Shown here: one piece after another, positions 2,371 to 57,719 of the stretch
Layout of the letters: every line of letters starts with the position of its first letter
Numbering within the stretch: the first letter of the stretch is position 1
NCBI RefSeq assembly: GCF_001194135.2
Contig: NC_068985.1
Location: forward strand, 2,595,070 to 2,659,069
Origin: Octopus bimaculoides
Lineage: Eukaryota
DNA: 64,000 nucleotides
Direction of reading: 5' to 3'
Notes under the pieces: generated by a model
Seen by the model: only the letters and a program-made list of their open reading frames with translations
What the model was told of the DNA's origin: nothing
Databases searched by the model: none
Translations under genes and position numbers: made by a program

Positions 2371-3225
2371 AATATTGTAAAATTGATAAATTGTAGTGAT
2401 GAGTGGAAAAAAGACAACATTTTGGATAGAGTCCTTCTTATGGAAAAGTTGAAAGGAGAGAAATTAATGAGAGCTCTCCTTTCATGGTGGGACTCTCTCC
2501 AAAACATAATCCACTCCTCATGCCATGTTCACTTTACTCTTTTTATCAGTTTCACCACATACTATAAGTCTTACTGATGTAAACCAACACCAGCCTCTTA
2601 GGATTATGTTTAATCATATATGTGTAGATGTTTGGGCTAAATTCCATAAATTTTTATGTCTCCTTTTTACAGGAACAGCTTGATGATAATGATGATGATG
2701 ATACAACCATTTTCACTGCTGGTATGGGTTGGATTGTTTGGCAGGTGTTGGTAAGCCAGAGAGCTGCACCAGGCTCCAATTGTCAGTTTTGGCAGGGTTT
2801 CTACAGTTGGATGCCCTTCCTAACACCAACCACTTTACAGAGTGTACTGGGTGCTTTTTATATGGCACCTGTACAGATGCTTTGTACAAGAACCCTGCAG
2901 GGGTGCTTTTTATGGCGCAGCAGCACAGATGCTTCATATATAGATGTTTGTATGTCATTCTTTCTTGCATTCTTTCATTTGATTCAGTCATTTGACTGTG
3001 GCCATGCTGGAGCAGTGCCTTTAGTCGAACAAACTGAACCCAGGATTTATTCTTTGTAAGCCTATTACTTATTCTATTGGTCTCTTTTCCCGAACCGCTA
3101 AGTTACAGGGACGTAAACACATCAACATTGGTTGTCAAGCCAAATCCACTCACTAGGCTTTGGTTGGCCTGAGGCTAAAGTAGAAGACTTATCCCAGAAC
3201 CACGTGGTTGGTAAACAAGCTACTT

Positions 3226-5138
3226 TATTTCATAGAATTGGCTATAAAAGCCGTACATAGAAGTAGCTGCGGGCTGGACAACACACAAAATGAAATGAAT
3301 GAAAAAATGATTAACGAAATTGGTGAGGAAAGACAGATGATGCCTGCCGATCACTGCTTTTCAAAAACATTGTTCTTTGTACAACAACCAATTTGAGGTT
3401 ATAAACCTCTTACTTTTATTCCTTTTCGACGTAAGGTCCATAAAAATGAGGCACTAAGCCTCTTACATTTTTCATAAATGGGTCATATGCACCCACAATA
3501 TGAGGCACTAAAAGCCTCTTAACTTTTTCCGTTATTTTCTGGCCTGCCAGCACCCGACCAGGCTCAATGCCTCACTCAAGCACCTCGATGGTGCTTCAGC
3601 TGGAAGCAAAACGTGTCTTCGGGGAAGGAGTTCATCACCTTACACAAATCAGTTTCCCACATGACCTCCACAGCTACTTGTGAAGGCCAATCAGGGTCCT
3701 TAATGCAGGTTAGAACCCCTCCCCTCCGACCTTCTTTAGCAAACTTTTAATAAAATCCTGAACTGCCCCTCCCTTGTGGAATAAGACTAAAAATTCCTCC
3801 TCCACATGGGGCGAGGCCACAGTTTCCACCGTCAGTGGTACAATTCCCACCGACAGGGTTTCGAGATACGCTGGCAGAGTATTAGTAATGGCCAGCAATG
3901 TCCCATTTTTCCTTTTTTTCTCTTTTACCACGGGAGGGTGGAGTTCTTCCATTTTGTCCTGAAGATTTTCCTTCCCTCCCGTAGCCTTAGGATCCCTCAG
4001 TGGGTAACCATTGTTACCCACCTTCTTCCTCACCTTCCGAATGAGGATGGGGGCGCTTCTTCCACCAACTGCTCCAGGACCCTACTCTGATCCTGTGGAC
4101 AGTTCTTTTTTATATGGCCTGGTTCCAGGCACAGGTGACACCAGGGGTGGGGGCGTTCCTCAAGTATCACCAGATACCTGTGTTACCAGCCATAGTCAAA
4201 AAGCCTGGGAAGACCAGATTTCTTGCAACTGATTGGGTTCACAGGGTCAAAACAGCTTTTGACCCAACCCAGTCAGCAGCTTGGATCTGTTGCTACCCAG
4301 ACCCCAGTGGATAGTATCTTCTATCCACTCAGGTTCCATTCCAGATGACAACCCACAGATCCAAGGTCTTGTTAACTTCTTCCCGCAATATGTGGGAAGA
4401 AACAGAATTTCCTGACCCTCCAAGGGCTGGCTCGCAAATCTGCAAGCCTCCTCAGAGGTGTCAAACAGCAGCCACACCATTACATATTTAGCACCCCTGG
4501 AAATAAATCTTATGATTGGCAGATACTCTGCCAACTCTTTTTCTATTTCTATTGTTTTTGAAGACGGCGATGGTGTCGAGTGACTTCGGGTATGTCCTCA
4601 ACACCACTGTCCTCTCCTCAAAGTCTTTCACCCACTCTTTGGGTGGGACAATCTCCCACTCCAAAACAGTGTCCATTTTCTTCACCATGTTTAGAAGAAA
4701 AGTTTTAAAAAAAGTTTAAAAAGTCCAAAAAAAGGAAAGTAGGAAGAAGGAAAGAAGACAGTTCAAAAACACAGCAAACACGATTCCGGCCAACTAGTAC
4801 TCCACTTGTAATCCAGGGGCACAGCAACAGGAACACAGCTCCACAAATTTCACCAAAAATTGGTGGAAAAAATTCCACAATTTTTTGGAGGTGGGATACA
4901 CCCACCAAAACAACACTCTTCTCACAGCTAAGTGAGACACTTAGCACAACTACAGGCAGACAAATGCCTGGAATCCAGTAGGGATTTCTTGTTAAAAAAA
5001 AAACAAACAACAAACCCCCACTGGATCCCAAAAAACAAATGCCTTACCTTACAGTTGTGCTTCAACAATTGACGACACTGGACACCAACGTCATGACACC
5101 ATTCAGTGAAAGGAAAAAACTGACACACACATGCGAAA
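3226..5138 (-). mobile_element. ORF1-only non-LTR retroelement (L1/Tx1-like or half-L1-like), about 1.9 kb, inserted into a SINE head
   Basis: Flanked by a 14-bp TSD (3212-3225 taaacaagctactt and 5139-5152 taagcaagctactt, 13/14 identical). More GC-rich than its flanks. Contains a broken gag-like ORF with a CCHC knuckle and no RT or endonuclease. Removing it rejoins a SINE. Confidence 0.8.
3576..4688 (-). pseudogene. Frameshifted ORF1/gag-like nucleic-acid-binding protein with CX2CX4HX4C zinc knuckle
   Basis: Fragments in several frames: MVKKMDTVLEWEIVPPKEW..., ...LLFDTSEEACRFASQPLEGQEILFLPTYCGKKLTRPWICG..., WCHLCLEPGHIKKNCP (knuckle at 4099-4140), then a basic/low-complexity tail ending TGA at about 3576. 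Confidence 0.75.
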
Positions 5139-5303
5139 TAAGCAAGCTACTTACCACACAGCCACTCCTGTGCCTATGTATAAACTAAGTATGTATAAAC
5201 ATTATTTGCAAAAATAGCCTTAAAATAGAAAATATGCAGAACAGAATGTATTATAGGATATGGTCTCTTTTTATATGTTACAGACTACACTTGTAAATGA
5301 GTT

Positions 5304-5344
<41 letters not shown>

Positions 5345-5959
5345 ACACACACACAGATATTGTCAGTGAAGGAGTCTAGAAAGAATATGTAACAATTATG
5401 TGAAATGACTATAATGGTGGTATGTGAAAGTAGAATATATTGTGGTACAAGGAAAAACTATATCTGATTGACTTCATTCCAACTCTGTCACTGCAACTAA
5501 TTGAACTGATCATGGGAAGTTGGAAGGTAAAATTGATTCTGATGAGGAATTGAACTCAGGAACATGAGATAACATAAATTCAAAGAAGTAAAACTTTTCC
5601 TCAGTTCTACTCTGCAACATGGGGTAATATCTAAATATTATTGTTAATAAACGTTGAAACGATAGCACAGTGGAATTTGGTTTAATTAGCAGTGTGGAGA
5701 AGAGAGCTTTCTGGTAACAAAAACTAACCAGTATATATGACTCCACTGACTGTGAGTAGTGCCGACTATTGAGCGAAGCCGATTTGTTCTGGCAGTCAGG
5801 CAGTTGATGAAATGGACAATGGCTGAGAAATATTCTCCATAAACAATATTTCAATTATATAGAATTCTATAGTATTATTTAATTGCTTTGGTAATTACAG
5901 GCATCTTCAAGATTGAAAGGAAGATGCCACATAAATAAAGCGGTCAAACTGATGTGGTA

Positions 5960-6570
5960 AAGTACCACCACCACAACCACCACCACCACTGTTGCTAATG
6001 TTCTTCCTATTATTACCAACACCTACCACCACTGCCACCATAACTACATATTAATAGCACTATATCAACTTCTACCACAGCTACCCCACCACCATAATGT
6101 ATCCCACTCCCACTAACACCACTATTAAATATTCTGCCACATACCTAAAACATTCAATAATACAACCACCACCACCACCACAGTCTGCTGCTGCTGCCAC
6201 CATCACCAACAGTAAACATCTGTGCAGTATTACTGTCTTCTGACTTTAGCCATAACGAGATGAGGAAAGAGAAATGATTTGCATTGCAAGAAGACACAGC
6301 AGTGCAACAACACGGTGCCAATGGTGTTTTTATGAATTGTAGCTGGGCAAGCAAATGATGGGTTTGCGACATGAAGCGTCGATGGTGACACAGTATATCA
6401 ACAGAGAACACACTTAGATATCAGCTTCTAAGAAGATATAGAAACTAGTTTGAAATGCTTGAGTGTAGTGGTGATAATGGTAGTAGTAGTAGTAGTCGTA
6501 GTTCAGGTGATAGTATTAATAAATGCTGTGATGGTAATGCTGTTGTTGTTGTTGTTCCTTTTGTTGTGAA
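5960..6570. repeat. (CCA/ACT)n and (AGT/GTT)n low-complexity tracts
   Basis: Visible directly. Confidence 0.8.
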
Positions 6571-6933
6571 TTGGTCTAATAAATGTTTGATATCAACTGA
6601 ACTTTACTTGATAGCTGAACTAGCTGCAACAATAACATCTTTGTTGAAGTCAGTGCTATACTGTGCAGGTCAAATGAAAATGTAGAAGTTCACTATATCA
6701 TTGCTTGTGGAGTGTATGTGCTGTTTCTGGCGGTTGTTCATTTGCTGTCAAAGCAGTTTTGATGTTGGCACTCTTGAAGTGGCTTTGATGACATAGGTAC
6801 AAATATTTTTGTACTCCCAAACTTTGCTCTGTAGTGGTGGCCGTGAGCAATACAGTCGTGTTGTCCATGATTATACTTTGGCTTGCCCCCAGAACAATTG
6901 CATAGTTTGAAAACCAATAAATATTATTCTCAC

Positions 6934-7044
6934 CTTCAAAATATGTTGTGTCTGTCTCATCGCTTGGTTGTGGTTGGAAGGGAGCTGGCTGTTCAAGTAG
7001 TTTCTCCCAAGCCACATTCTCAAAAATCTTCATGTTTTTAACAC
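6934..7044 (-). CDS. MASTL: Internal coding exon, AGC-kinase C-terminal region, most similar to Greatwall/MASTL: (x)VKNMKIFENVAWEKLLEQPAPFQPQPSDETDTTYFE
   Basis: 111-nt exon bounded by ttgcag| and |gtgaga, phase 1-1, no stops. The peptide matches the AGC C-tail pattern (F..V.W..L......PF.PQP.DETDT.YFE) as I recall it from Greatwall/MASTL. No other kinase exon was found in the window, so the symbol is tentative; MAST1-4-like is possible. Confidence 0.72.
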
Positions 7045-7225
7045 CTGCAATGTGAAAAATGAAAATATATAAACACAAAACAAAGAAAACCTAATTTCAC
7101 TCTCTAATACCTAAAATAGAGTGACGAAGACTTGGAATAAAACTAACATGTATTAACACAAGTTATTTACAGCGGGGGGAGCGCTAAGCAGTGATAAGTA
7201 AAATTGCAATGTTGCTATCAGTGTG

Positions 7226-7608
7226 AATATGCTTGAAGCACGTTCAAACTGGGGAACAAGCTACTCATGTTTTGTCATGGAAAATATAACCCGTTTGTTG
7301 ACAAATGGGGTATATACACCTAGATCAGCTCACAGCCCCACCTATTCAGGTTGTGAGATGCTAGCATTTGAGAGTCGTCATCTCCTCTTTGGTCACAGGT
7401 ACTAGGCAGGCAGAACTATGAGTTGGCTAGTGTCTGTGACTGAGAGGAGATAACTTCCCCAAAATGCTAGCATCTCACAGTCTAGGTAGGTGGCACTGCA
7501 AGCTGATCTAGGTGTATACACACAATTTGTCAACAAGTGAGACATATTCTGCATGAGAAAACACAATGAGTAGCTTATTCTCTCGTTCAAATGTGCCTCA
7601 ATAACATT
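7226..7608. repeat. Long imperfect inverted repeat (about 180-bp arms, about 20-nt loop)
   Basis: caagctactcat / atgagtagctta, tatacacctagatcagct / agctgatctaggtgtata, tgtgagatgctagcattt / aaatgctagcatctcaca, gtcacag..actag / ctagt..ctgtgac. Confidence 0.9.
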
Positions 7609-7680
7609 AAAATAACACAAGTTAATCCAAATACACATACAAGCACAGGCGTGCTTGTGTGGGAAGAAGCTTGCTTCCCA

Positions 7681-7807
7681 TTTTTTACTCATCTTTTTGT
7701 ATTCATTTCATTCATTAATGTCCGTGTCCAGCCCGCAGCTTCTTTATATCTGTCTGTCTTTGTTTGTCCCTTCTATGTAATGCCTTTATGGCAAAATTTA
7801 TGAAATA
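7681..7807 (+). mobile_element. 5'-truncated 3' end of the same element family as 3226-5138, inserted into a SINE head
   Basis: Shares attcatttcatt...tgtccagcccgcagct...cttctatgta...tatgaaata with the 3' end of the 1.9-kb element. Flanked by a 17-bp TSD (7664-7680 aagaagcttgcttccca and 7808-7824 aagaagtttgcttccca). Confidence 0.8.
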
Positions 7808-7947
7808 AAGAAGTTTGCTTCCCAGCCACATGGTTCTGGGTTCTCTCCCACTGCATGGCACCTTGGGTAAGCGTCTCCTACTATAGCCTCAGGCAGACCA
7901 AAACCTTGTGAATGGATTTGGTAGACAGAAACTGAAAGAAGCCTATC

Positions 7948-7979
<32 letters not shown>

Positions 7980-8509
7980 CCACTACCACCACTTGACAAC
8001 TGGTGTTACAGTCTTGAAAAAACAACAAAAAAAAGTACTGGGGTCAATTTGTTTGACTAAAAATTCTTCAAGGTAGTGCCCCAATGACTGAATCAAGTAA
8101 AAGACAAAAGATACCCAGCATTAAGTAATGCCTAAAATAAAACTACAAGGTTTCCTCCATTCTACAAGGGAGATCTAAACCTTACCTCACCTTTTGCAGA
8201 GCATTGTTAAAGAAAGTACATTAATGTATTTGAGGAGAAGATTTACAAAATGCTGAAGAAAATGACAGCAAAATAACAATCAGTTTCTCAACTTTGATCG
8301 TTCATTTACAAACCCAAACAAAACAAAGTTTTGAGAAAATCTCAACAGAAAAGTAATGAAACACAGAACAGGTGTTTTTACACACTAACAATACAGAAAT
8401 GCATAATCAGTGGTGGATAATTAGTAAAAATCGCACACCTTTCATAAATAGGACCAAACTCACAGCCCTTAATTAGAAGATTGCCTATTTGAGCTTTACT
8501 TACAAAAGA

Positions 8510-27800: not shown

Positions 27801-30800
27801 ATTTAGGGGTGAATTATACCATTTGTGAAGAAAGGCATATCTTAAAGTTCATGTTCTACCAATATCGATCAAACGTCCATTGATAGGAAACAGTGGATGT
27901 TTTGATTACTTAAGGCCAATTTGCCAACAGTATGAACATGTTGTGTCCCTGTGAACATGAGGTTGAGTTAAGAACAAGGGGGTGGGGGAGGGGGGGGAGG
28001 TTGGAAGGAAATGAATCAAGTTGCCAGTTACATTTATCGCAAGCAGTATTTACTCAGTCGATTTGCTGTTAATAAGTGTCAAAGGACCAGAATATCAAAA
28101 GTCAAATTAATATATGCCTCGTTTATTCAGATTTTTAAGGTCACAATGACTGAAATAGCAAACTGATTAGCTAACATTGCACAGAAGACATAATATGGCA
28201 TCAGAGGATAATACTAAGTGCCAGCCATCTATTCTGATGAGATCAACTGAAGTTTAATAAGTCTGTGCATGCTTCTGTATGTATAGGCGCAGGCGTGGTA
28301 AGAAGCTTGCTTCCCAACCACATGGTTCCAGGTTCAGTCCCACTACATGGCACCTTGGGCAAGTGTTTTCTACTATAGCCTCGGGTCGATCAAAGCCTTG
28401 TGAGTGGATTTAGTAGACGGAAACCATGTGGTTCGTAAGCAAGCTTCTTACCACACAGCCATGCCTGAGTTTTAATCAAAACTGTATTGCAAGTTTTATT
28501 CAATTGTTGCTTACTTATACCCCATTCCAAAGTCCCATGCTCCACTTAAAGAAAACACTGGTATAGAATATGAATTATAGATAAAAGAACATAGCAAATA
28601 CTAATTCTTAGGTTGTGAACTAACATTTGGTTGCTTAACTCCAAAAGTCTGCTTAAGTAAGGCTAAAGGCTAAATTAGGGTGCTCTCAGTCTTTCCTTTT
28701 TTAAAGCCATCTAGCCCCCAAATAACCAAAACCCAGTCTTCCTTAAACACACCCTTTCTTCTTACAAAGGGCTTTTGATGATGTAATCTGAGGTTTCTCT
28801 ATATCTGAAAAAGGATGGATTGACTCTGACAAATACTTTTAACCCTAGGTTTGCTGTTACTGAACTGGTCTATACTTAAAAGATGACAAACATTTACAGC
28901 AGCAGACCTGTTATTTTAACAATAATAAGGAACTAATAGATGTTATTGTTTTTAAGTGTTAATGTGTTTTAGTCGAAAGGTGTAGTTGTTGATCAAAAGT
29001 ATTCCAGTGATCTTGTCTTTCTACTGGGCATTACTTATTTAGGACGACATTATTCAATGTATTCTCCTATTTCAGAGTATATAATTTGAGAGAGCTTTGG
29101 CTGCTACTTCTAGCTTGTCAGGTGACCATACAGAGAAAGCATCAGGGTACACACACTGAAGTGTTGTCATATCAAACTACCAGAAATCAGAATATTTTTT
29201 GACACAATCTTCCAACTGAAAATTTTGAAAAACTGAGTTCTTCTAAATTTATTTATAAGATTACTTTATGAGGTTACAGTGAACAAATTAAAATGTCGAT
29301 TTATAAAACAGACACAGAGATTGCAAACTACTGGTGTAATATTTTCATATACTTTCTGGAACTGTATAGATTGAAGAAGAAGACCACAACAATTAACAAT
29401 GCTATTTGTATGGCTGTTGTCTTTCTGTACTTTTATTTCTTACTGGAGTTGGTATATGGAAGTGGTGACTGCGTAGAGAGCATTCTTTTGAATAGATTCT
29501 AATTTATTGGTGTTCTGATATCTTATATGTCACTAGCTTATCACATCTCTTTGTGGTCTTGTATCCTTTGCCTGAAAGCTTGTCTTCTTCTTCTTCTTCT
29601 TCTTCACTGTCTCTCAGTCCTTGAATATTTCTTCATATTCATAGCTAGACAATCTTATGATTTTACTATTCTTTCAACATTCAGTGGAGTTTTAGTAAAA
29701 TAATTATTGTTATTTATCATGATTAACCATGCAAGCCAAAAGCACACTGTCTAGACAAGTAATCCAAGTGTGTGCAGTAGGCAAGCTTGTATGGTAGCAG
29801 TATTTGAGAGATCAGAAAATCTCTTCTTCATATGTGGCTACAAGATGGAGCCAGATTGGCTTATATAGAAACAAACTTATATTAGTTTTAATTTTTAAGA
29901 ATTGCACGATATATTTTTTTCTTTTTTCCCCTATCAAGTACATCATCAATATGTGATCTGTTTGGCTTATGTAAATGCAAAAGCAGAATTCATCTTATTT
30001 AATATTTCCAAGTCTCAGGAGCAAAAAAAGGGACAAAAATTGCAGATGGGTGGACAATTCTGAACGAAGCTATTAGCACAGTCAGAACAATGAAAAAATG
30101 TGAGATATATGTTTAGATAATGCAACATGCATGGACAAATCTTTATGCTTGTATAACTAGAAATACACTCACATACACACACAATGATTTTCCTTGGTTA
30201 CTTCAATGAATGCTGTATAAAAATTACATTGTTTCAAGTGAATCATTCCAGTGTCATATTTTTATAAAACAGTCACATGTACATATACTTTTTTTTTTCT
30301 ATAGTAAAATCACTAAATAAGAAAGAGCACCTAAGATAATATTGTGCTGAATAGCTAAAGTATCCTGCAATTAATTTAAATGTGATTACCAAGAAAAATA
30401 TGATTGAATAGGAATCTTATAATTTAACAGCAAAATTCTAAAATGGTTTGCATTTATTTGTGGGTGTGCATGTGTTCGCACACGTGCATAGTCGCTGGTT
30501 GCTATGAGTCATATGTGTATTAAAATGCTGCTGTGTGTTGAAGTTTAAAATGTGTATGTGCAGTCATTCTATAGCTATATGTGTTACATATTTTCTGTGT
30601 GTATGTGTGCCTTTTCTAAAACTGATATGCATTGTGTGATGACAGACAGGGATTTTAGATTTTTGAGGGTAGTTTCTGCAACAACATATCTGATATTAAT
30701 TTTAAAATTTTAACTTTTTGTTTTTAATAAAGTGGTGACTTTACTTGTTATGGAATAAATATTAAATACCAACTAATAACCAACAGGAACTTATATATTT

Positions 30801-37441: not shown

Positions 37442-39089
37442 GATATATGTGTGTATGTATGTTCATTTGTTCCCCCACCATCGCTGACAGTTGGTGTTGG
37501 TGTGTTTATGTCCTTGCAATTTATCAGTTCATCAAAAGAGACCAATAGAATAAGCACCGGGCTTAAAAAAGAAATAACTCCTGGGGTTGATCTGTTTGAC
37601 TAAAATTCTTCAAGGCAGGACCCTGTACAAAGAAAAGCATCGACAAACAAAGTCATCAATGTTGCAAAAGATACTTAGGGGATTTCTACAAAATACTGAT
37701 CTAAAAAGGGAGCTCTACCTGTGATATCTGTAAATTGAACGAAACAGAATGTGGGACACACACTCCCTTATATGAATCCAAACTCAAGGTTGACTTCAAT
37801 GACAAGACTTACTAAAGTAATCACTGAACTCTGTCTGAAGTTGAATGCTCTAAAATATTTGCTTTACAATTTCGTCTGCCATTACGTTCTGAGTTCAAAT
37901 TAAGCTGAGGTCGACTTTGCCTTTCATCCTTTCAGGGTCAATGAAATAAGTACCAGTTACACACTGGGGTCGATGTAATTGACTTAATCCCTTTGTCTGT
38001 CCTTGTTTGTCCCCTCTGTGTTTAGCCCCCATTCCCTGTGGGCAATAAAGAAATAAATATGTGCTTTGTATTCTCATGTGGATAGGTGAACAGATGCAAT
38101 GCAGAATAAAAGTGTTTTTTGAACGGAAAAAACAATGAAACCCTTGTAGTGGATTTGAACTCTTGACTCATAATCAGATAAATCCAGTCAATCATCTCAC
38201 CATTATTATAAAACACCCAACTCTGTAGTCTTCCAGGAAAATCAATTAACAGTTAATCAACCCCCTCATCCCCCCCAAGAACCTCTCTTCCACTACTATC
38301 AGCATGAACTGAAGGTGTAGGTGTGTAATGTAGTTTACAAAGCCTTGATGGTCTGTATTAGGAGAGGGAGGGGAATAATTTATAAAAGCTGTATCGTTTA
38401 TACCACCACAGGAAAAGCAAAGGCCTACATACTAAGAAAAAAAAACAAAAAGAAAAGAATCATTTAGCATGACTTGCAGATAACATGCATGTTTGGGGTT
38501 TGTTTTATGGAGAAATTGTGTGTGAAGACTTGTGGGGATTTATTAGCAGGGGGGGGGGGTATAGTAGGTGGCTCCATCAAACTGTTGCAAGAGTAAACAC
38601 AGGCAGGTGGCAGAACAGAAGCAACAGTTAATGGAAATCAATGGATTATCTTTATAATTTTCCGTTTTATCAAAATTTTGTTGCTGTTTAAAAAGAAAAC
38701 AAAAACATTTTATACACTTTTTTTTCTCTCTCTCTATTATAGCAGGAGTTAAATCATTCTAGAAACTAACAAATTTAATATATGAATTTCATGGGCAGGT
38801 GTTTTACAGTCGAATGCACTTTCTAATATTGGTTGCTCAACCATGAAGAGTGTTGTGATGACTGACACAGTAAAACCCCTGAGCTTTAAAACATTTAGTT
38901 CAATAAGTTAGCTCAGTGGGTTCAAATCCTTTCAACATTCACTTTACTTTGTCTTCCATTTATACAAAGTTGATAAAATAAGCAACAGGAGGGTCAATTC
39001 ATTTCACAAGGACTCTATTTCTCGACAAAAGATGGCTTCTGCTAACAACAACCAAAACCAGCTGTTGTTACCACCACCGCTTCCACCAC

Positions 39090-47960: not shown

Positions 47961-50226
47961 CCCAAATGTCACCACCAAACAGCAGTATTGCAAAATATAT
48001 CACACATACACAATAAACACCCATTAATGTCTGCTACAGACACACAAATGCACAAACCCCAGTGGTTTCTCTTTTTCATAATATGCCTGGCACCACTTGC
48101 TCCATGTTGCTCCCATTACAAATAAAAAATAAAAAAGAGAAAACCAACAGGACAACATTCTTTTCACCTGTTTAATCAACCTAGGTCCGTCCTTATCTGG
48201 TCACCCAATCTTTTTTATATCTTTTAAAATTTCCTTCAGTCATGAGACTGCGGCCATGCTGGGGCATTACTTTGAAGAATTTTTTGTCAAATGAATCGAA
48301 TCCCAGTGCTTATTTCTCTTTTTCAAGTCTGGTACTTATTCTATCGCTCTCTGTTGCTGAACTGTTAAGTTACAGGAATGTAAACACACCAACACCAGCT
48401 ATCAAGAGGTGGTAGTGGTGGTGGTGGTGGAAGGCAAATACAGACACCAAGACACACACATATATATATATATATATCTATATATATATATAGATATATA
48501 TATATATATATGACAAGCTTCTTTTAGTTTCCATCAACCAAATCCACTCACAAGGTTTTCATCAGCCTGTGGCTATAGTAGAAAACACTTGCCCAAAGTG
48601 CCACACAGTGGGACTGAACTCAGAACCATGTGGTTGGAAGCAAATTTTTTTATCACACAGTTACACCAGCACCTGTATGAATTACTATTCTTTTTAATTT
48701 GAATCTTCATCAACTATTTTGATTAAGATAAGAAATTACATTCTAGGGGAGGGTTAAAGCCTATTAAATCTTGTCAACTTAGGACAAAAAAACAAAACAA
48801 AACAAAACAAAACGAAAAAGTCAACCATTATTCTTTTCTTCTCTAGACACAAGACCCAGAATTTTGGGGGATGTGGGGCTAGTCAATTAGGTCGACCCCA
48901 TTACACAACTGGTATTTAATTTATCGACCTCGAAAGGATGAAAGGCAAAGTTGACCTTGGCAGAATTTGAACTTGGAACATAAAGACAGATGAAATACCA
49001 GTAAGCATTTTGCCCAGCGTGCTAGCGTTTCTGCCAGTTCGCTGCCTTCAACCATTATTATTAGAATGCAATGGGATGTAATATAGTCTGGTTGTCTACC
49101 AATTCTACCAACCTGTTGCTAGCCATGCTAATTCTGTACTTACCAACTGACCAACACTACATATTGTACACATTTTCAAAATAACACATAGAATTACACA
49201 TACAGTATAATTATCTGACACATGCATGGGCATATGTATATTGAATAGTTCTGCAGCAATGAGCCAATCAACTTTCAAACTTCAAATATAGTTGAATGTC
49301 TTCTTTATATTCACAAAGAATTCTTTGTGAAGAGTAGAGCCTCTTCACGGTATCGACCAGACTATCAGATGTTGTTATACATCACTGATCACAATGCTCT
49401 TCGCACTGTTTTAGCTTTCCAATGGTACCACCCTGCTGGTTAGGCAAGAGGGCCAACGTTCCTCCGGCTCAGAAGGTTATTCCATTGCAGGGTTCACCCA
49501 TTTGCAGCTGAGTGGACTGAAGCACATGAAATGAAGTGTTTTGCTCAAGAACACAATGTGCTACCCAGTCCAGGAATCGAACCCATGATTTTGTGATTGT
49601 GAGAGCAGCAGCCTAACTACTAGGCTGTGCACCTTTTAAGTAGAGCTGATTAGATCAGTTAATCCCCGAGAGTTGCTTTTATAAATCATTACACAACTGA
49701 GTGTAATCCTTCTAGATCAGTCACATGGCTGAGAGCCATCTTTCTAAAGAAGCTGCACAGCTTTGAGACTATTCGGTCAATTGCATATTTGTGCATGCAT
49801 TTCGGTGCAGTGTCTGACTGGCGACAAGAAATTTGAATGCAAGTCTAAAATTATTTGTACAATCATAGAAACACACTATCTCTCCTCCTCAGTTTGAAAG
49901 GGGGGGGGGTGAGGGAAGATGAATACTGTTTAAAATATTCAACAATACAACAAGCTATGAATATTCCAACACTTGCCATACCTAGCTTCATCATGATTAC
50001 AATTATCATGAGCAGACTGTTTATTTTCAATATTATCAAGACTTAAAATATCTGTAAACTACTTCATGAAAAAATTATATTGTGGAACAACCATTTTAGC
50101 CATTTGAGATACACAAAAAATTAAATATATTTTTCATTTATTTCAGCAGGTGTTGACCATTGTTATTGTCCAACTGTGACATAGTGACAAAACTCAAAAA
50201 ATATTTACAAACTTTATTGACATTAT

Positions 50227-54120: not shown

Positions 54121-54145
54121 TATTTGTTATTAAGGATATATTTCT

Positions 54146-54378
54146 TATTTCTTTATTGCCCATAAGGGGCTAAACATAGAGGGGACAAACAAGGACAGAC
54201 AAACGGATTAAGTCGATTATATCGACCCCAGTGCATAACTAGTACTTATTTAATCAACCCCGAAAGGATGAAAGGCAAAGTTGACCTCGGCGGAATTTGA
54301 ACTCATAACGTAGTGGCAGACGAAATACCACTAAGCATTTTGCCCAGTGTGCTAACGTTTCTGCCAGCTCACCGCCTT
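54146..54378 (-). mobile_element. SINE family C (tRNA-like head), full length with perfect 15-bp TSD
   Basis: taaggatatatttct at 54131-54145 and 54379-54393. Head ggcggtgagctggcagaaacgttagc...gttatgagttcaaattcc. Related copies at about 37850-38060(+) and 48865-49045(-). Confidence 0.9.
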
Positions 54379-56186
54379 TAAGGATATATTTCTCTGTACT
54401 TAGACATGATTCATTTAAGAACTTATTTTGTATACAACTGATCTCAGATACACATCATACATAAAAAGCAGGGCAGCAGACAAGTGATGATGGGACATAT
54501 ATGTAGCCATGGAAACCTCAGTCAAAATTTCATGTCATTGAAACAGGTGTTCTGTTTACATTAGGGTGGTTAGATAGAACAGAACTGAAATTACAAAAAC
54601 GATGCTGTACTGAATATCCCTTTAAACCAATTCCAGCCTCGGAAAATGAATGACGATGGTGATGATTTCAATATATATATATATACATATATATATTTGA
54701 AAAACTAACTCTTTATTATAAGCTGGAAGATTTGAAAGAAATCATTCTCCAAAGGAATTATGAAAATGCCATAAAAGAATGGTGCAATGAAGATTTACAG
54801 GAAAGGACATGTGAATAGATTGTTAGCATTGGGTTTTCAATGATCCTCCTTATGTTATCCTGAATATATTTACTAGGATATTCAAAATAGATATGAGAAC
54901 ATCTTATGGTTCCATACATAGTATGTGATGTACAAACAAACATAAGGTTATTATTAGATATCAGAGAGAGACAGAGAGAGAAGAGAAAGGAGAGAAAGGA
55001 GAAGCAACAGAGAAAAGAGTTGGATTGATGAAAATGTATACAAAACATTATTTATAATTTTTTTTTTATATAATCTACCCAGTCATTCCATGGCATATGA
55101 TGTCTTATATAAGTATTAAAACTAGCCATTCTACCAGGTTATTATCCAACAAACCCATTAGAGAAAATCATATTTCTCCCGTCATTCAATTCTATCAGGT
55201 ATCCAACAAAAAAAGTATACAACATGAGCTTATTTAAATAGAAAAAAAACTCACAAAAAAACAAACTGAAAGCCACCCAAAACACTTCCATTCCACGAAA
55301 TCTTCTTACTATGCAAATCACTCACTTTATCAAATGGCATATATTATAAGAAATCTCGTTACTTCTCCAACTAAACCGTCTACAAGCTATTCAAAAATGT
55401 ATGGTTAACCCACTGAGTGTCAAGCTATGAAATCATAAAAGAACATCTTAGAATTTAATTCACTGTTCTCTTTGCAATCCTATTCCTTTTAATTCTTTCT
55501 GTTTGTTCATTTTGTTTTTGTCTTGATTAAGTAAAAATAATTAATGAAGATAATGATTTCAGATAGGAGAAAACTCTTCAAATGAAGATAGGATGATAGA
55601 ATACTTTCTAATTTTCTTTTTAATATGAAAATTCTTTTTTAATATAGAATGCCTTTGGTGGAATTGTCAGATCAAACTATTTGAAATTATGCCCCGCAGT
55701 CTTACGTTTTTACCAATTTAATTCGATATATATTTCCAGCTGTCAGATATTTCCTGTTTTCAAACTTTATTACATTTTATAATGAACCGATACAGGAAAA
55801 TACTAGCTATCACAGTTGTTGTAGTTGTTGCCACCACCACTATTAACAATGATGACGACAACAAAAACAACAACAACAACAATGACAATGGTAACAACTC
55901 TTTAAAATCCTACTGAAATATAAGGATAATGAGAGAATCCCTTGTACCAAATGCTTTTACTGTTTAGCAATGTCTTTGTTAATTGCTTTCAACTTTTCTC
56001 TTTCAACAGTTTTTTTTTTTTTTAACTCATAAATTAATGAAAAGAAAAAGAAAATCATAAAAATATATTTCACAATGACCATACATGTTCAGGGTAACCT
56101 CGTTAGTTCATTAATAAGATCATTAATAAGAGCTGTTTCTCCAGACAAGATGTTATCATCACTACCACCACTGTAGCTATGTCAAT

Positions 56187-56636: not shown

Positions 56637-57719
56637 CCCTACTCCTCCTTAACTTTTACATCTGTTACAACCTTCAGTATTTGTGATACTAAATAAGCAC
56701 ACATCGAAACAGTGATTTCAAAGTCACAAGTAATTAATACACTGGAACAAACTAATTATTTTTTAATGTTTTAATTTAACTTTCTGACATTGAAAAAGAG
56801 CAGGGGTTTTTTTTTCAGTTTACTTTGTCTATAAAGAAATATCACAGAAAAATAAGTGCACAGTTTCAAATAGAGTTTCTAAACCATTTTGGAGTGGACG
56901 ATCAGCACAGATCTACTCACATAACTTGCTTCTTTCTTTCTGGATATTCAGAAAAGTTTCTCAGATTATATAAAACTGGATTATGATTGTAAAATAGGAT
57001 AGACATAGTTTTGCAGGATTTATGTTTATTTAATAAAAATGTATTCAATTAGGCACAGCTTGAAGTTTAATACAAAAATGTCCATTCATAATTAGCAACA
57101 TACTAGGAGAATTTCAAAGATCCATACAACTATAAATTTTAGCAAGAAAGTAGGGGGAATCTCTGCCAAAAATGTTACATTTTTATTTAATCTTTTAAGT
57201 AAAATGTGCTGACTTAGAATTACAAATCCCATGCTTTAATGAAAGTATTTTCTGACCAGGTTTTAAACATTCAGAAACAATTGCTACTTAATGAGAAACA
57301 GAAACAAGCTACTTTGTATCATAAAAGAACAAGAAATGTATGCAAATGAAGTACACACACACACACACAATCTTGTAAGATGGAAATCATATTTGATTCT
57401 ATATTTTTTTTGAAAATTCTATAACATAATCTGATTGTAACTAACTACATCATAGAAGAGAGCAGCTATAAAACTTATGTACGATTATGTAAGAGGTCTA
57501 CAGCAGTTTTGTTTTAATGCCAAAATTAAATGAATATAATTGACTTTGAATATTTGCAATGACATTAAATATTCCAAATTATAAATTGGTTCTCAAAAGT
57601 TGAGGAACAATTTCTAGTTTTTTCCCAATACTTTAAGAAAAATCTATAGTGGAATATTGAATAATAGAAACTCTAGCCTTCCTCCTAACTTCAATGGCTA
57701 TGAAGTGCTCACTTATTCA

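What the first reader, a model, noticed from the sequence alone, without database searches (positions are those of the whole stretch)
3212..7824. Candidate sequence-specific retroelement that targets the head of the dominant SINE
Seen in sequence: two members of one family (1.9 kb at 3226-5138 on minus; 127 bp at 7681-7807 on plus) share a 3' end (tgtccagcccgcagct...tatgaaata). Both sit in family A SINEs, in the same orientation as the host, with their 3' end joined at the same point, immediately before aag(a/t)agcttgctt and after gtgtgg(t/g). Each has its own TSD (14 bp and 17 bp), anchored at that point and differing at the other end, and the 5' junctions differ. That pattern fits independent target-primed insertions. 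Established: Tx1-clade L1 elements insert sequence-specifically into multicopy targets such as tRNA, snRNA genes and other transposons. Inference: this family uses a very abundant SINE as a safe-harbour target, disrupting the probable Pol III A-box region.
Basis: partly seen in the sequence, partly recalled or inferred. Interest (0 to 1): 0.85.

Follow-up and report, generated by a model that had tools for sequence, protein, structure and literature searches.

The report
Retroelement that targets octopus SINE heads
An old, gag-only (ORF1-only) LINE-derived retroelement of octopus genomes has inserted repeatedly at one exact position in the head of the commonest SINE. This is a new target for the known "safe-harbour" habit of site-specific LINEs, not a new kind of element.

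Summary
Copy A (3226-5138, minus) and copy B (7681-7807, plus) share a 3' tail (local score 58 against 20.9 ± 3.6 for shuffles). Both lie in the host SINE's orientation, with their 3' ends at the same bond (GTGTGG[T/G]|AAG[T/A]AG). Their TSDs are 14 and 17 bp. Removing each insert restores a colinear SINE. The two hosts belong to different SINE subfamilies, and each TSD pair carries its host's own variant, so the insertions were independent.

Two Octopus sinensis copies, found only by ORF1 homology, also begin directly after a SINE head at the same place, but their 3' sides are lost.

Copy A is not autonomous. It has a 5'UTR, a decayed ORF1 (tandem RRM-like fold plus CCHC knuckle), a possible ORF2-start remnant and a 3'UTR. 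ORF1 evolved under purifying selection (dN/dS 0.24-0.34).

Both the ORF1 and the 3' hairpin tail are homologous to APE+RT+zf-RVT LINEs of octopods. One of those LINEs sits inside an (ATT)n microsatellite. The same tail type ends a dispersed, non-site-specific SINE.

Membership of the Tx1 clade is plausible but untested. The direct autonomous partner was not found, and no genome-wide census could be run.

The parts
5139..5176 (-). Head of copy A's host SINE (approximate 5' end of the SINE down to the insertion). It contains the A-box-like TGGCTGTGTGG and the left TSD copy AAGTAGCTTGCTTA (5139-5152).
3226..5138 (-). Copy A: a 1913-bp full-length but ORF2-less retroelement, made of 5'UTR, ORF1 and 3'UTR.
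   Evidence: It aligns over its 5'UTR and ORF1 with O. sinensis copies L001 (71.5% identity) and L002 (73.4%).
4689..5138 (-). 5'UTR of copy A. The 5' terminus ..TTTCGCATGTG is shared with L001 and L002 (TGTGCATGCG / TGCGCATGTG).
   Evidence: Alignment A1.
3576..4688 (-). Decayed ORF1, with at least 3 frameshifts and several stops. The CCHC zinc knuckle CHLCLEPGHIKKNC lies at about 4090-4131. It is homologous to O. sinensis LOC115225585 (P0001, 57% identity).
   Evidence: AlphaFold2 model of P0001: pLDDT 81.5, two RRM-like domains. Top Foldseek hits are SFPQ/NONO and UP1. dN/dS is 0.24-0.34.
3394..3533 (-). Three repeats spaced about 54 nt apart in the 3'UTR, each with a GAGG..CCTC hairpin. 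One reads MKNVRGL (3445-3465), resembling the ORF2 N-termini CLNVRGL (L003) and CLNVKGL (L012). This is possibly the stump of the deleted ORF2.
   Evidence: The 355-nt 3'UTR folds with a z-score of -2.97. The ORF2-remnant reading is an inference.
3226..3307 (-). 3' tail shared with copy B. It holds a 4-bp hairpin GGCU-UUUAU-AGCC (3240-3252) and the terminal ..UAUGAAAUA.
   Evidence: Hairpin covariation across 9 tails.
3212..3225 (-). Right TSD copy of A (AAGTAGCTTGTTTA), where the host SINE resumes.
2970..3211 (-). Rest of copy A's host SINE (approximate 3' end). It carries its own internal deletion of about 34 bp relative to other copies.
7632..7680 (+). Head of copy B's host SINE, including the left TSD copy AAGAAGCTTGCTTCCCA (7664-7680).
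7681..7807 (+). Copy B: a 127-bp 5'-truncated copy holding only the 3' tail. It has the hairpin UGCC-UUUAU-GGCA and the terminal UAUGAAAUA. It also has a 28-bp segment absent from A, which matches the tail of the F2 SINE.
7808..8110 (+). Right TSD copy (7808-7824) and the remainder of copy B's host SINE.
54145..54385 (-). Related but separate: a full copy of a second, dispersed SINE (F2). Its last ~70 nt are homologous to the tail of A and B. It has its own 15-bp TSD GAAATATATCCTTAA and does not lie in a SINE head. Further copies are at 37869-38056 (+) and 48881-49051 (-).

Best explanation
Copies A and B belong to an old family of non-autonomous, ORF1-only retroelements derived from an L1-group (probably Tx1-like) LINE of octopods.

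Proposed mechanism:
1. The element RNA is bound through its 3' tail, which consists of a 4-bp hairpin with a YUURU loop, an A-rich spacer and a terminal GAAAUA. The binding protein is the ORF2 protein (APE endonuclease plus reverse transcriptase) of a related autonomous LINE, supplied in trans.
2. The bottom strand of a SINE head is nicked opposite GTGTGG(T/G)|AAG(T/A)AG, 1 nt 3' of the A-box-like motif.
3. The freed 3'-OH primes reverse transcription from the last A of the tail.
4. The top strand is cut 14-17 bp downstream, which produces the TSD.
5. 5' truncation (copy B) or full-length copying (copy A) follows.

The abundant SINE, about 12% of an octopus genome, therefore serves as a harmless landing site. 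Each hit separates the SINE's A-like and B-like boxes and brings in T-runs, so it should silence that SINE copy.

Shown: the insertions, the TSDs, the common 3' junction, the independence of the A and B events, the ORF1 fold and its selective constraint, and the homology of ORF1 and tail to autonomous LINEs.

Inferred: trans-mobilisation, an endonuclease as the source of specificity, the Tx1 clade assignment, and inactivation of the SINE.
For: - Exact junctions and TSDs.
- Empty-site reconstructions are colinear with intact SINEs.
- Each host's subfamily variant is duplicated in its own TSD.
- A/B tail homology: z of about 10.
- Only 2 of 14-16 SINE heads in the window are interrupted, both at the same bond.
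- Two O. sinensis copies, chosen without knowledge of their flanks, start right after a SINE head at +15.
- No LINE ORF2 homology in A or elsewhere in the window.
- ORF1: CCHC knuckle, tandem RRM-like model, dN/dS 0.24-0.34.
- ORF1 relatives sit directly upstream of an APE/zf-RVT ORF2 (L003) or an ORF2 start (L012). The L003 ORF2 matches only human L1 ORF2p in the PDB.
- The LINE tails of L003, L013 and L014 share the hairpin and the AAAGAAAT end with A and B. Covariation: 94% of cells paired, 3 of 4 pairs compensatory, 0 of 500 shuffles as high.
- The L003 LINE lies between two (ATT)n tracts, so target-specific behaviour may occur in this LINE group.
- Literature: Tx1-clade LINEs target transposons, snRNA genes, 5S genes and microsatellites (PMC4494074). 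Type I ORF1p in animals is consistent with Tx1 (PMC5203782). O. vulgaris has 13 recently active L1-Tx1 families (PMC13282606).
Against: - Only two insertions have both junctions. No genome-wide census was possible.
- The two O. sinensis copies have no recognisable 3' tail, TSD or SINE body downstream. They may not be simple insertions into SINEs.
- No autonomous copy with this exact tail or ORF1 was found.
- The same tail type ends the F2 SINE, whose five readable insertion sites all differ. If F2 and this element share a partner, that partner's endonuclease is not site-specific.
- The clade was never tested by an RT phylogeny.
Confidence: 0.7

Rival explanations
1. Homology-guided homing with no site-specific endonuclease. 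Resident copies are transcribed through into the downstream SINE sequence. That read-through RNA (AAGUAGCUUGCUU...) anneals to nicked SINE heads elsewhere. An ordinary, loosely specific LINE ORF2p, the one that also moves the F2 SINE, then primes exactly at the element's last base. The specificity would reside in the RNA, not in the enzyme.
For: - The tail type is shared with the dispersed F2 SINE, whose targets are unrelated to each other.
- Co-transcription with the target is known to strengthen the specificity of R1/R2-type elements, as cited in PMC4494074.
- The 3' junction is exact in both copies.
Against: - No read-through transcript has been seen.
- The A/B and F2 tails are only about 75% alike, so they may serve different partners.
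- The L003 relative lies within (ATT)n, which suggests that enzyme-level target preference exists in this LINE group.
- TSD lengths differ between copies (14, 15, 15, 17), as expected for fresh second-strand cuts.
Confidence: 0.15
2. There is no targeting. One ancestral SINE-plus-insert chimera was spread by retrotransposition, segmental duplication or ectopic gene conversion between SINE copies, and later suffered deletions.
For: - The 5' junctions of A, L001 and L002 lie within 1-2 nt of each other.
- SINE copies provide ample homology for gene conversion.
Against: - The TSD lengths differ (14 against 17 bp).
- The hosts of A and B belong to different SINE subfamilies, and both TSD copies of each insertion carry that host's variant.
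- The host of A has a private 34-bp deletion.
- The inserts contain T5-T6 runs, which would stop Pol III.
- ORF1 dN/dS of 0.24-0.34 at dS 0.7-0.9 shows descent through functional masters, not neutral decay of a dead chimera.
Confidence: 0.07
3. The roughly 45-nt SINE head is part of the mobile unit, through 5' transduction or transcription starting at the SINE's 5' end. L001 and L002 would then be dispersed head-plus-element copies at arbitrary sites, and only A and B would be true hits in SINEs.
For: In L001 and L002 the head starts at the SINE's own 5' end, and no SINE body follows within 10-30 kb.
Against: - No TSD flanking a head-plus-element unit was found.
- Both copies lack their 3' ends altogether, so later deletion explains them equally well.
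- Copy A shows no doubled head.
- Copy B is 5'-truncated yet sits at the same bond, so the site is chosen at the 3' (priming) end.
Confidence: 0.08

Closest known systems
Target-specific Tx1-clade LINEs: Tx1L in the piggyBac element Tx1D, Tx1-Mar in Mariner-N4_AMi, Tx1-9_AMi in Harbinger elements, Keno in U2 genes, Kibi/Koshi in (TC)n/(TTC)n (PMC4494074)
   Same: - Insertion by TPRT at a fixed position of a multicopy sequence, including other transposons.
- Relatives carry APE-type ORF2s.
- Type I ORF1p (RRM plus CCHC).
- One relative here sits within a microsatellite, (ATT)n.
   Different: - The target is a SINE head, which is not among the targets listed in the papers read.
- The copies in hand have no ORF2.
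- Clade membership has not been tested by an RT phylogeny.
HAL1 (half-L1), the ORF1-only non-autonomous derivative of mammalian L1 (PMC5753468)
   Same: - It encodes only ORF1p and keeps LINE UTRs.
- It must borrow ORF2p in trans.
- Its ORF1 is kept under selection.
   Different: - HAL1 has Type II ORF1p (Transposase_22) and a poly(A) tail, and it is dispersed.
- This element has tandem RRMs plus CCHC and a hairpin/GAAATA tail, and it is tied to one site.
SINEU-3, a non-autonomous passenger that inherits the Mariner-N4 preference of its Tx1-Mar partners (PMC4494074)
   Same: A non-autonomous retroelement that shows the target preference expected of a site-specific partner LINE.
   Different: - SINEU is a short snRNA-headed SINE with no ORF.
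- Here a second passenger with the same tail type (the F2 SINE) does not share the preference.
R1 of insect 28S rDNA (from general knowledge: APE-type, 14-bp TSD, aided by read-through homology)
   Same: - APE-type site specificity.
- A TSD of about 14 bp.
- A possible role for co-transcribed target sequence.
   Different: - A different clade and a different target.
- R1 is autonomous.
- Nothing here links the element to R1 by sequence.

Membership tests
Non-LTR (LINE-type) retroelement integrating by target-primed reverse transcription | Flanking target-site duplications of variable length, generated from the host sequence | tested here: met
   TSDs of 14 bp (A) and 17 bp (B), each carrying its host SINE's own variant. 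Empty-site reconstruction is colinear with intact SINEs.
Non-LTR (LINE-type) retroelement integrating by target-primed reverse transcription | Common 3' end with variable 5' truncation | tested here: met
   A is 1913 bp and B is 127 bp. Their tails are homologous (score 58 against 20.9 ± 3.6) and both end in TATGAAATA.
Non-LTR (LINE-type) retroelement integrating by target-primed reverse transcription | Encodes a reverse transcriptase and an endonuclease (autonomous LINE) | tested here: not met
   No ORF2. The only long reading frame is ORF1. tblastn with LINE ORF2 pieces finds nothing in the window. The element is therefore a non-autonomous derivative.
Non-LTR (LINE-type) retroelement integrating by target-primed reverse transcription | LINE-type ORF1 protein (RNA-binding gag-like) | tested here: met
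   - CCHC knuckle.
- AlphaFold2 model with two RRM-like domains, matching tandem-RRM proteins.
- Homologs at E down to 3.6e-14 lie directly upstream of APE/RT ORF2s.
Tx1 clade of the L1 group | RT-domain phylogeny placing the element within Tx1 | not testable with these tools
   The element has no RT. No reference Tx1/L1 RT set was available. Source names of ORF2 homologs were uninformative.
Tx1 clade of the L1 group | ORF2 with APE endonuclease, RT and a C-terminal CCHC (zf-RVT) | tested here: inconclusive
   Present only in relatives that share ORF1 or tail homology (L003, L013, L014: PF03372, PF00078, PF13966). The only PDB matches are human L1 ORF2p.
Tx1 clade of the L1 group | Type I ORF1p (RRM plus CCHC) | tested here: met
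   In animals this type is described as consistent with Tx1 (PMC5203782), but it is not exclusive to that clade.
Tx1 clade of the L1 group | Target-sequence-specific insertion (frequent in the clade but not universal) | tested here: met
   Two complete junction pairs at the same bond, plus two further 5' junctions in another species. The sample is small.
HAL1-like ORF1-only LINE derivatives | Retains only ORF1 between LINE UTRs, with ORF1 conserved by selection | tested here: met
   Structure. dN/dS 0.24-0.34. A and L002 both end ORF2 after about 10 codons (weak).
HAL1-like ORF1-only LINE derivatives | Derived from mammalian-type L1 (Transposase_22 ORF1p, poly(A) tail) | tested here: not met
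   No Transposase_22 hit. The tail ends in GAAATA with no poly(A). The resemblance is one of architecture only.
SINE | Short, with an internal Pol III promoter head and no ORF | tested here: not met
   Copy A is 1.9 kb and carries a roughly 370-codon ORF. Its 5' end is not tRNA-like.

The most novel reading that the evidence does not exclude
The target specificity may not come from a dedicated endonuclease. It may instead be carried by the non-autonomous element itself, either through read-through or complementary RNA that guides priming at SINE heads, or through its own conserved tandem-RRM/CCHC ORF1 protein. Two passengers of one LINE machinery would then have different integration patterns: this element, and the F2 SINE with the same tail type. 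That would make this a hyperparasite that both borrows a LINE's enzyme and selectively disables a rival SINE.
Probability: 0.15. Interest if true: 0.75.

Novelty: new member of a known kind. Interest (0 to 1): 0.45.

Why it matters
Site-specific LINEs are the natural models for programmable, safe-harbour gene insertion, and for how transposons coexist with their hosts. This family would add a SINE to the known list of targets (rDNA, snRNA, 5S and tRNA genes, microsatellites, DNA transposons and LTR elements).

It shows that a gag-only derivative can keep a fixed address across species for a long time.

It also offers a natural contrast for asking where TPRT specificity resides. The same tail type occurs on a site-specific element, on a dispersed SINE, and on LINEs, one of which lies inside an (ATT)n tract.

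For octopus genomics, it explains some "uncharacterized protein" gene models. It also points to one way in which SINE copies are inactivated.

Tried and rejected
- Metagenome scan for the tail pattern: 0 hits.
- The search for related loci with the ORF1 profile in metagenomes: nothing.
- Two word-indexed protein searches for close ORF1 relatives gave only the same two O. sinensis models.
- Exact look-up of a window ORF found nothing, so neither the species nor orthologous empty sites could be obtained.
- ARAGORN and Rfam did not recognise the SINE head as a tRNA.
- Source names of ORF2 homologs gave no clade label.
- No TSD was found for a head-plus-element unit in L001 or L002.
- No SINE body or tail lies downstream of those copies.
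- A junction-like string at 57324 (minus) proved to be a chance match in non-SINE DNA.
- TRF missed the three 54-nt repeats; the repeat finder found them.
- ORF1 relatives in L004, L005, L006 and L012 are other LINE families and are not next to SINE heads.
- Thermodynamic folding of the short tails alone is not exceptional (z of -0.1 and +0.7). The support for the hairpin comes from covariation only.

Full report
**What the window is.** The window is octopus DNA. The only close protein relatives of the insert are two Octopus sinensis gene models. The window holds about 15 copies of one roughly 350-bp SINE. The SINE's centre (GGCACCTTGGGCAAGTGTCTTCTACTATAGCC...) looks like a CORE-type domain. 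Octopus SINEs were described as tRNA-derived, and OR2 as a CORE-SINE (Ohshima & Okada 1994, cited in PMC4758252). ARAGORN and Rfam do not call the head a tRNA. The Pol III reading therefore rests only on the A-like TGGCTGTGTGG and the B-like GGTTC(C/T)GGGTTCAGTCC motifs.

**The observation.**
- Copy A occupies 3226-5138 on the minus strand. It is flanked by AAGTAGCTTGCTTA (5139-5152) and AAGTAGCTTGTTTA (3212-3225).
- Copy B occupies 7681-7807 on the plus strand. It is flanked by AAGAAGCTTGCTTCCCA (7664-7680) and AAGAAGTTTGCTTCCCA (7808-7824).
- Both end in ...TATGAAATA and are followed at once by AAG(T/A)AG. Both lie in the orientation of their host SINE.
- Their last ~100 nt are 78-82% identical in two colinear blocks around a 28-bp indel. 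The local score is 58, against 20.9 ± 3.6 (maximum 47) in 2000 dinucleotide shuffles.
- Removing each insert and one TSD copy restores sequences colinear with about 18 intact SINE heads.
- Of the 14-16 heads in the window that contain this stretch, only these two are interrupted there.
- The bond lies one base 3' of the A-like box, between the A-like and B-like boxes.

**Were the two events independent?** Uninterrupted SINEs come in two head variants, AAGTAG..TTTACC and AAGAAG..GCTTCCC. The host of A is the first kind and the host of B the second. In each case both TSD copies carry the host's own variant. The host of A also has a private deletion of about 34 bp. The TSD lengths differ (14 and 17 bp). 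B's 5' junction shows a 3-nt CCA microhomology, typical of truncated LINE insertions (direct reading). The inserts carry T5-T6 runs that would stop Pol III. Together these facts argue against one amplified chimera and against gene conversion.

**Copies elsewhere.** The conceptual ORF of A matches P0001 (LOC115225585, 281 aa, 57% identity) and the N-terminus of a chimeric model, P0002. Their loci, L001 and L002, were found through the protein alone. Both contain full-length 5' ends that align with A from its first bases (..TGTGCATGCG..TGCGCATGTG). In both, the base before the element is the end of a SINE head...GTGTGGTAAGTAGCTTGCTTCC and ...GTGTGGTAAGAAGTTTGCTTCC. Each head starts at the SINE's own 5' end, and the DNA upstream is unrelated. 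The implied TSD is 15 bp.

Both copies break off before their 3' ends, at (CA)n- and (TG)n-like sequence. No tail, TSD or SINE body lies downstream. They support the target only from the 5' side. They leave room for the idea that the head travelled with the element.

**What the element is.** Copy A consists of four parts:
- a 450-nt 5'UTR;
- a reading frame of about 370 codons, broken by at least 3 frameshifts and several stops;
- three hairpin repeats spaced 54 nt apart;
- the tail.

It contains no RT or endonuclease, and the window holds none related to the LINEs below. Pfam finds only a weak CCHC knuckle.

An AlphaFold2 model of the intact homolog has pLDDT 81.5 and shows two beta-alpha-beta domains followed by the knuckle. 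Its best PDB matches are tandem-RRM proteins (SFPQ/NONO, hnRNP A1 UP1). Probability is 1.0, but TM-scores are low because the domain arrangement differs. This is Type I ORF1p (PMC5203782).

Between A, L001 and L002, dS is 0.67-0.92 and dN/dS is 0.24-0.34. The copies therefore descend from long-lived functional masters.

After ORF1, A reads MKNVRGL and L002 reads LSYGYLNV followed by (TG)n. These resemble the ORF2 starts MANLRIGCLNVRGL (L003) and MSICLGCLNVKGL (L012). The family thus looks like an ORF2-deleted "half-LINE". This last point is a weak inference.

**Relatives and the tail.** An exhaustive HMMER search found 47 relatives of the ORF1, at 19-36% identity and E down to 3.6e-14. All those with names come from octopods. 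One of them, P0003, lies directly upstream of an ORF2 with Exo_endo_phos and zf-RVT domains in L003. That ORF2 matches only human L1 ORF2p in the PDB.

The 3' ends of that LINE and of two related ones were compared with A and B. The related ones are L013, from a JGI contig, and L014, from Argonauta. All show the same design:
- a pyrimidine-rich stretch, TTGTTTGTCCC.TCTATGT;
- a 4-bp hairpin with a YTTRT loop;
- an A-rich spacer;
- a terminal ..AAAGAAAT(A).

Across nine tails the hairpin is paired in 94% of cells, with compensatory changes in 3 of 4 pairs. None of 500 shuffles reaches the observed score, and slid controls give 48% or less. The alignment was trimmed by hand to the hairpin, which favours the structure.

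Both the ORF1 and the tail therefore tie the element to one group of APE/RT LINEs. The L003 LINE lies between (ATT)18 and (ATT)7, and L013 ends in a long (ATT)n. This resembles the microsatellite-specific Tx1 families Kibi and Koshi (PMC4494074). O. vulgaris is reported to have 13 recently active L1-Tx1 families (PMC13282606). A Tx1-like identity is therefore plausible. No RT phylogeny could be made, and database names gave no help.

**A complication.** The same tail type ends a second SINE, here called F2. Its copies are at window 54145-54385, 37869-38056 and 48881-49051, and there are at least three in L002. Its TSDs and targets are all different: GAAATATATCCTTAA, ATATKTGCTTT, GGTAATATATGAT, GGTSTTCTTTATGCC.. 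and GGTTATAAG... F2 is therefore not site-specific.

There are two ways to read this. F2 and this element may use different, related partners, only one of which is site-specific. Alternatively they share a loosely specific partner, and the address comes from the element's RNA (read-through into the SINE, as in R1/R2) or from its protein. The data do not exclude the second.

**Comparison with what is known.** Target-specific APE-type LINEs that land in other transposons are well documented. Examples are Tx1L in Tx1D, Tx1-Mar in Mariner-N4, and others in Harbinger and LTR elements (PMC4494074). Their non-autonomous passengers can inherit the preference (SINEU-3). ORF1-only derivatives are also known (HAL1, PMC5753468). 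I found no report of a SINE head as a target in the papers searched. That search was limited, and Repbase was not available.

**Verdict.** I classify it as a new member of a known kind, of moderate interest.

Noticed in passing
window 54145-54385 (-), 37869-38056 (+), 48881-49051 (-); L002 11666-11893, 40356-40589, 43340-43507: A second, dispersed SINE family (F2) of about 235 bp, with head GGCGGTGAGCTGGCAGAA... Its 3' tail is homologous to the tail of copies A and B and to octopod LINE tails. Each copy has a different TSD and target.
   Followed up: yes
L003 9724-9777 and 15348-15368: An O. sinensis LINE with ORF1 plus an APE/zf-RVT ORF2 lies between two (ATT)n tracts. A related JGI contig (L013) ends in at least 35 ATT repeats. 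These may be (ATT)n-specific LINEs.
   Followed up: partly
window 7226-7608: A palindromic element of about 380 bp (arms of 121 nt at 79% and 43 nt at 74% complementarity), directly upstream of copy B's host SINE. It looks like a hairpin MITE.
   Followed up: partly
L001 10001-10846; L002 10001-36638: The O. sinensis gene models LOC115225585 (P0001) and 'K02A2.6-like' (P0002) are transposon-derived. P0001 is this element's intact ORF1. P0002 splices an ORF1 start onto an integrase-like fragment across 26 kb.
   Followed up: partly
protein P0056 (NCBI, 'MAG: zinc-binding domain-containing protein [Herbaspirillum sp.]'); L013 (JGI metagenome 3300045642): Proteins 64-79% identical to an octopus LINE ORF2 are filed under a bacterial MAG and a metagenome. 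This is probably cephalopod DNA in those data sets.
   Followed up: no
window 3394-3533 (-): Three diverged repeats spaced 53-55 nt apart in copy A's 3'UTR, each with a GAGG..CCTC hairpin. The 355-nt 3'UTR folds with a z-score of -2.97.
   Followed up: partly
window 28289-28467: Two SINE heads face each other: 28295-28424 on the plus strand and 28467-28422 on the minus strand. This is an inverted SINE pair or a SINE-in-SINE arrangement.
   Followed up: no
window 5960-6210 and 6460-6570: Long imperfect (CCA)n/(CAC)n-type tracts, and their complement (GTT/GGT)n a few hundred bases further on.
   Followed up: no
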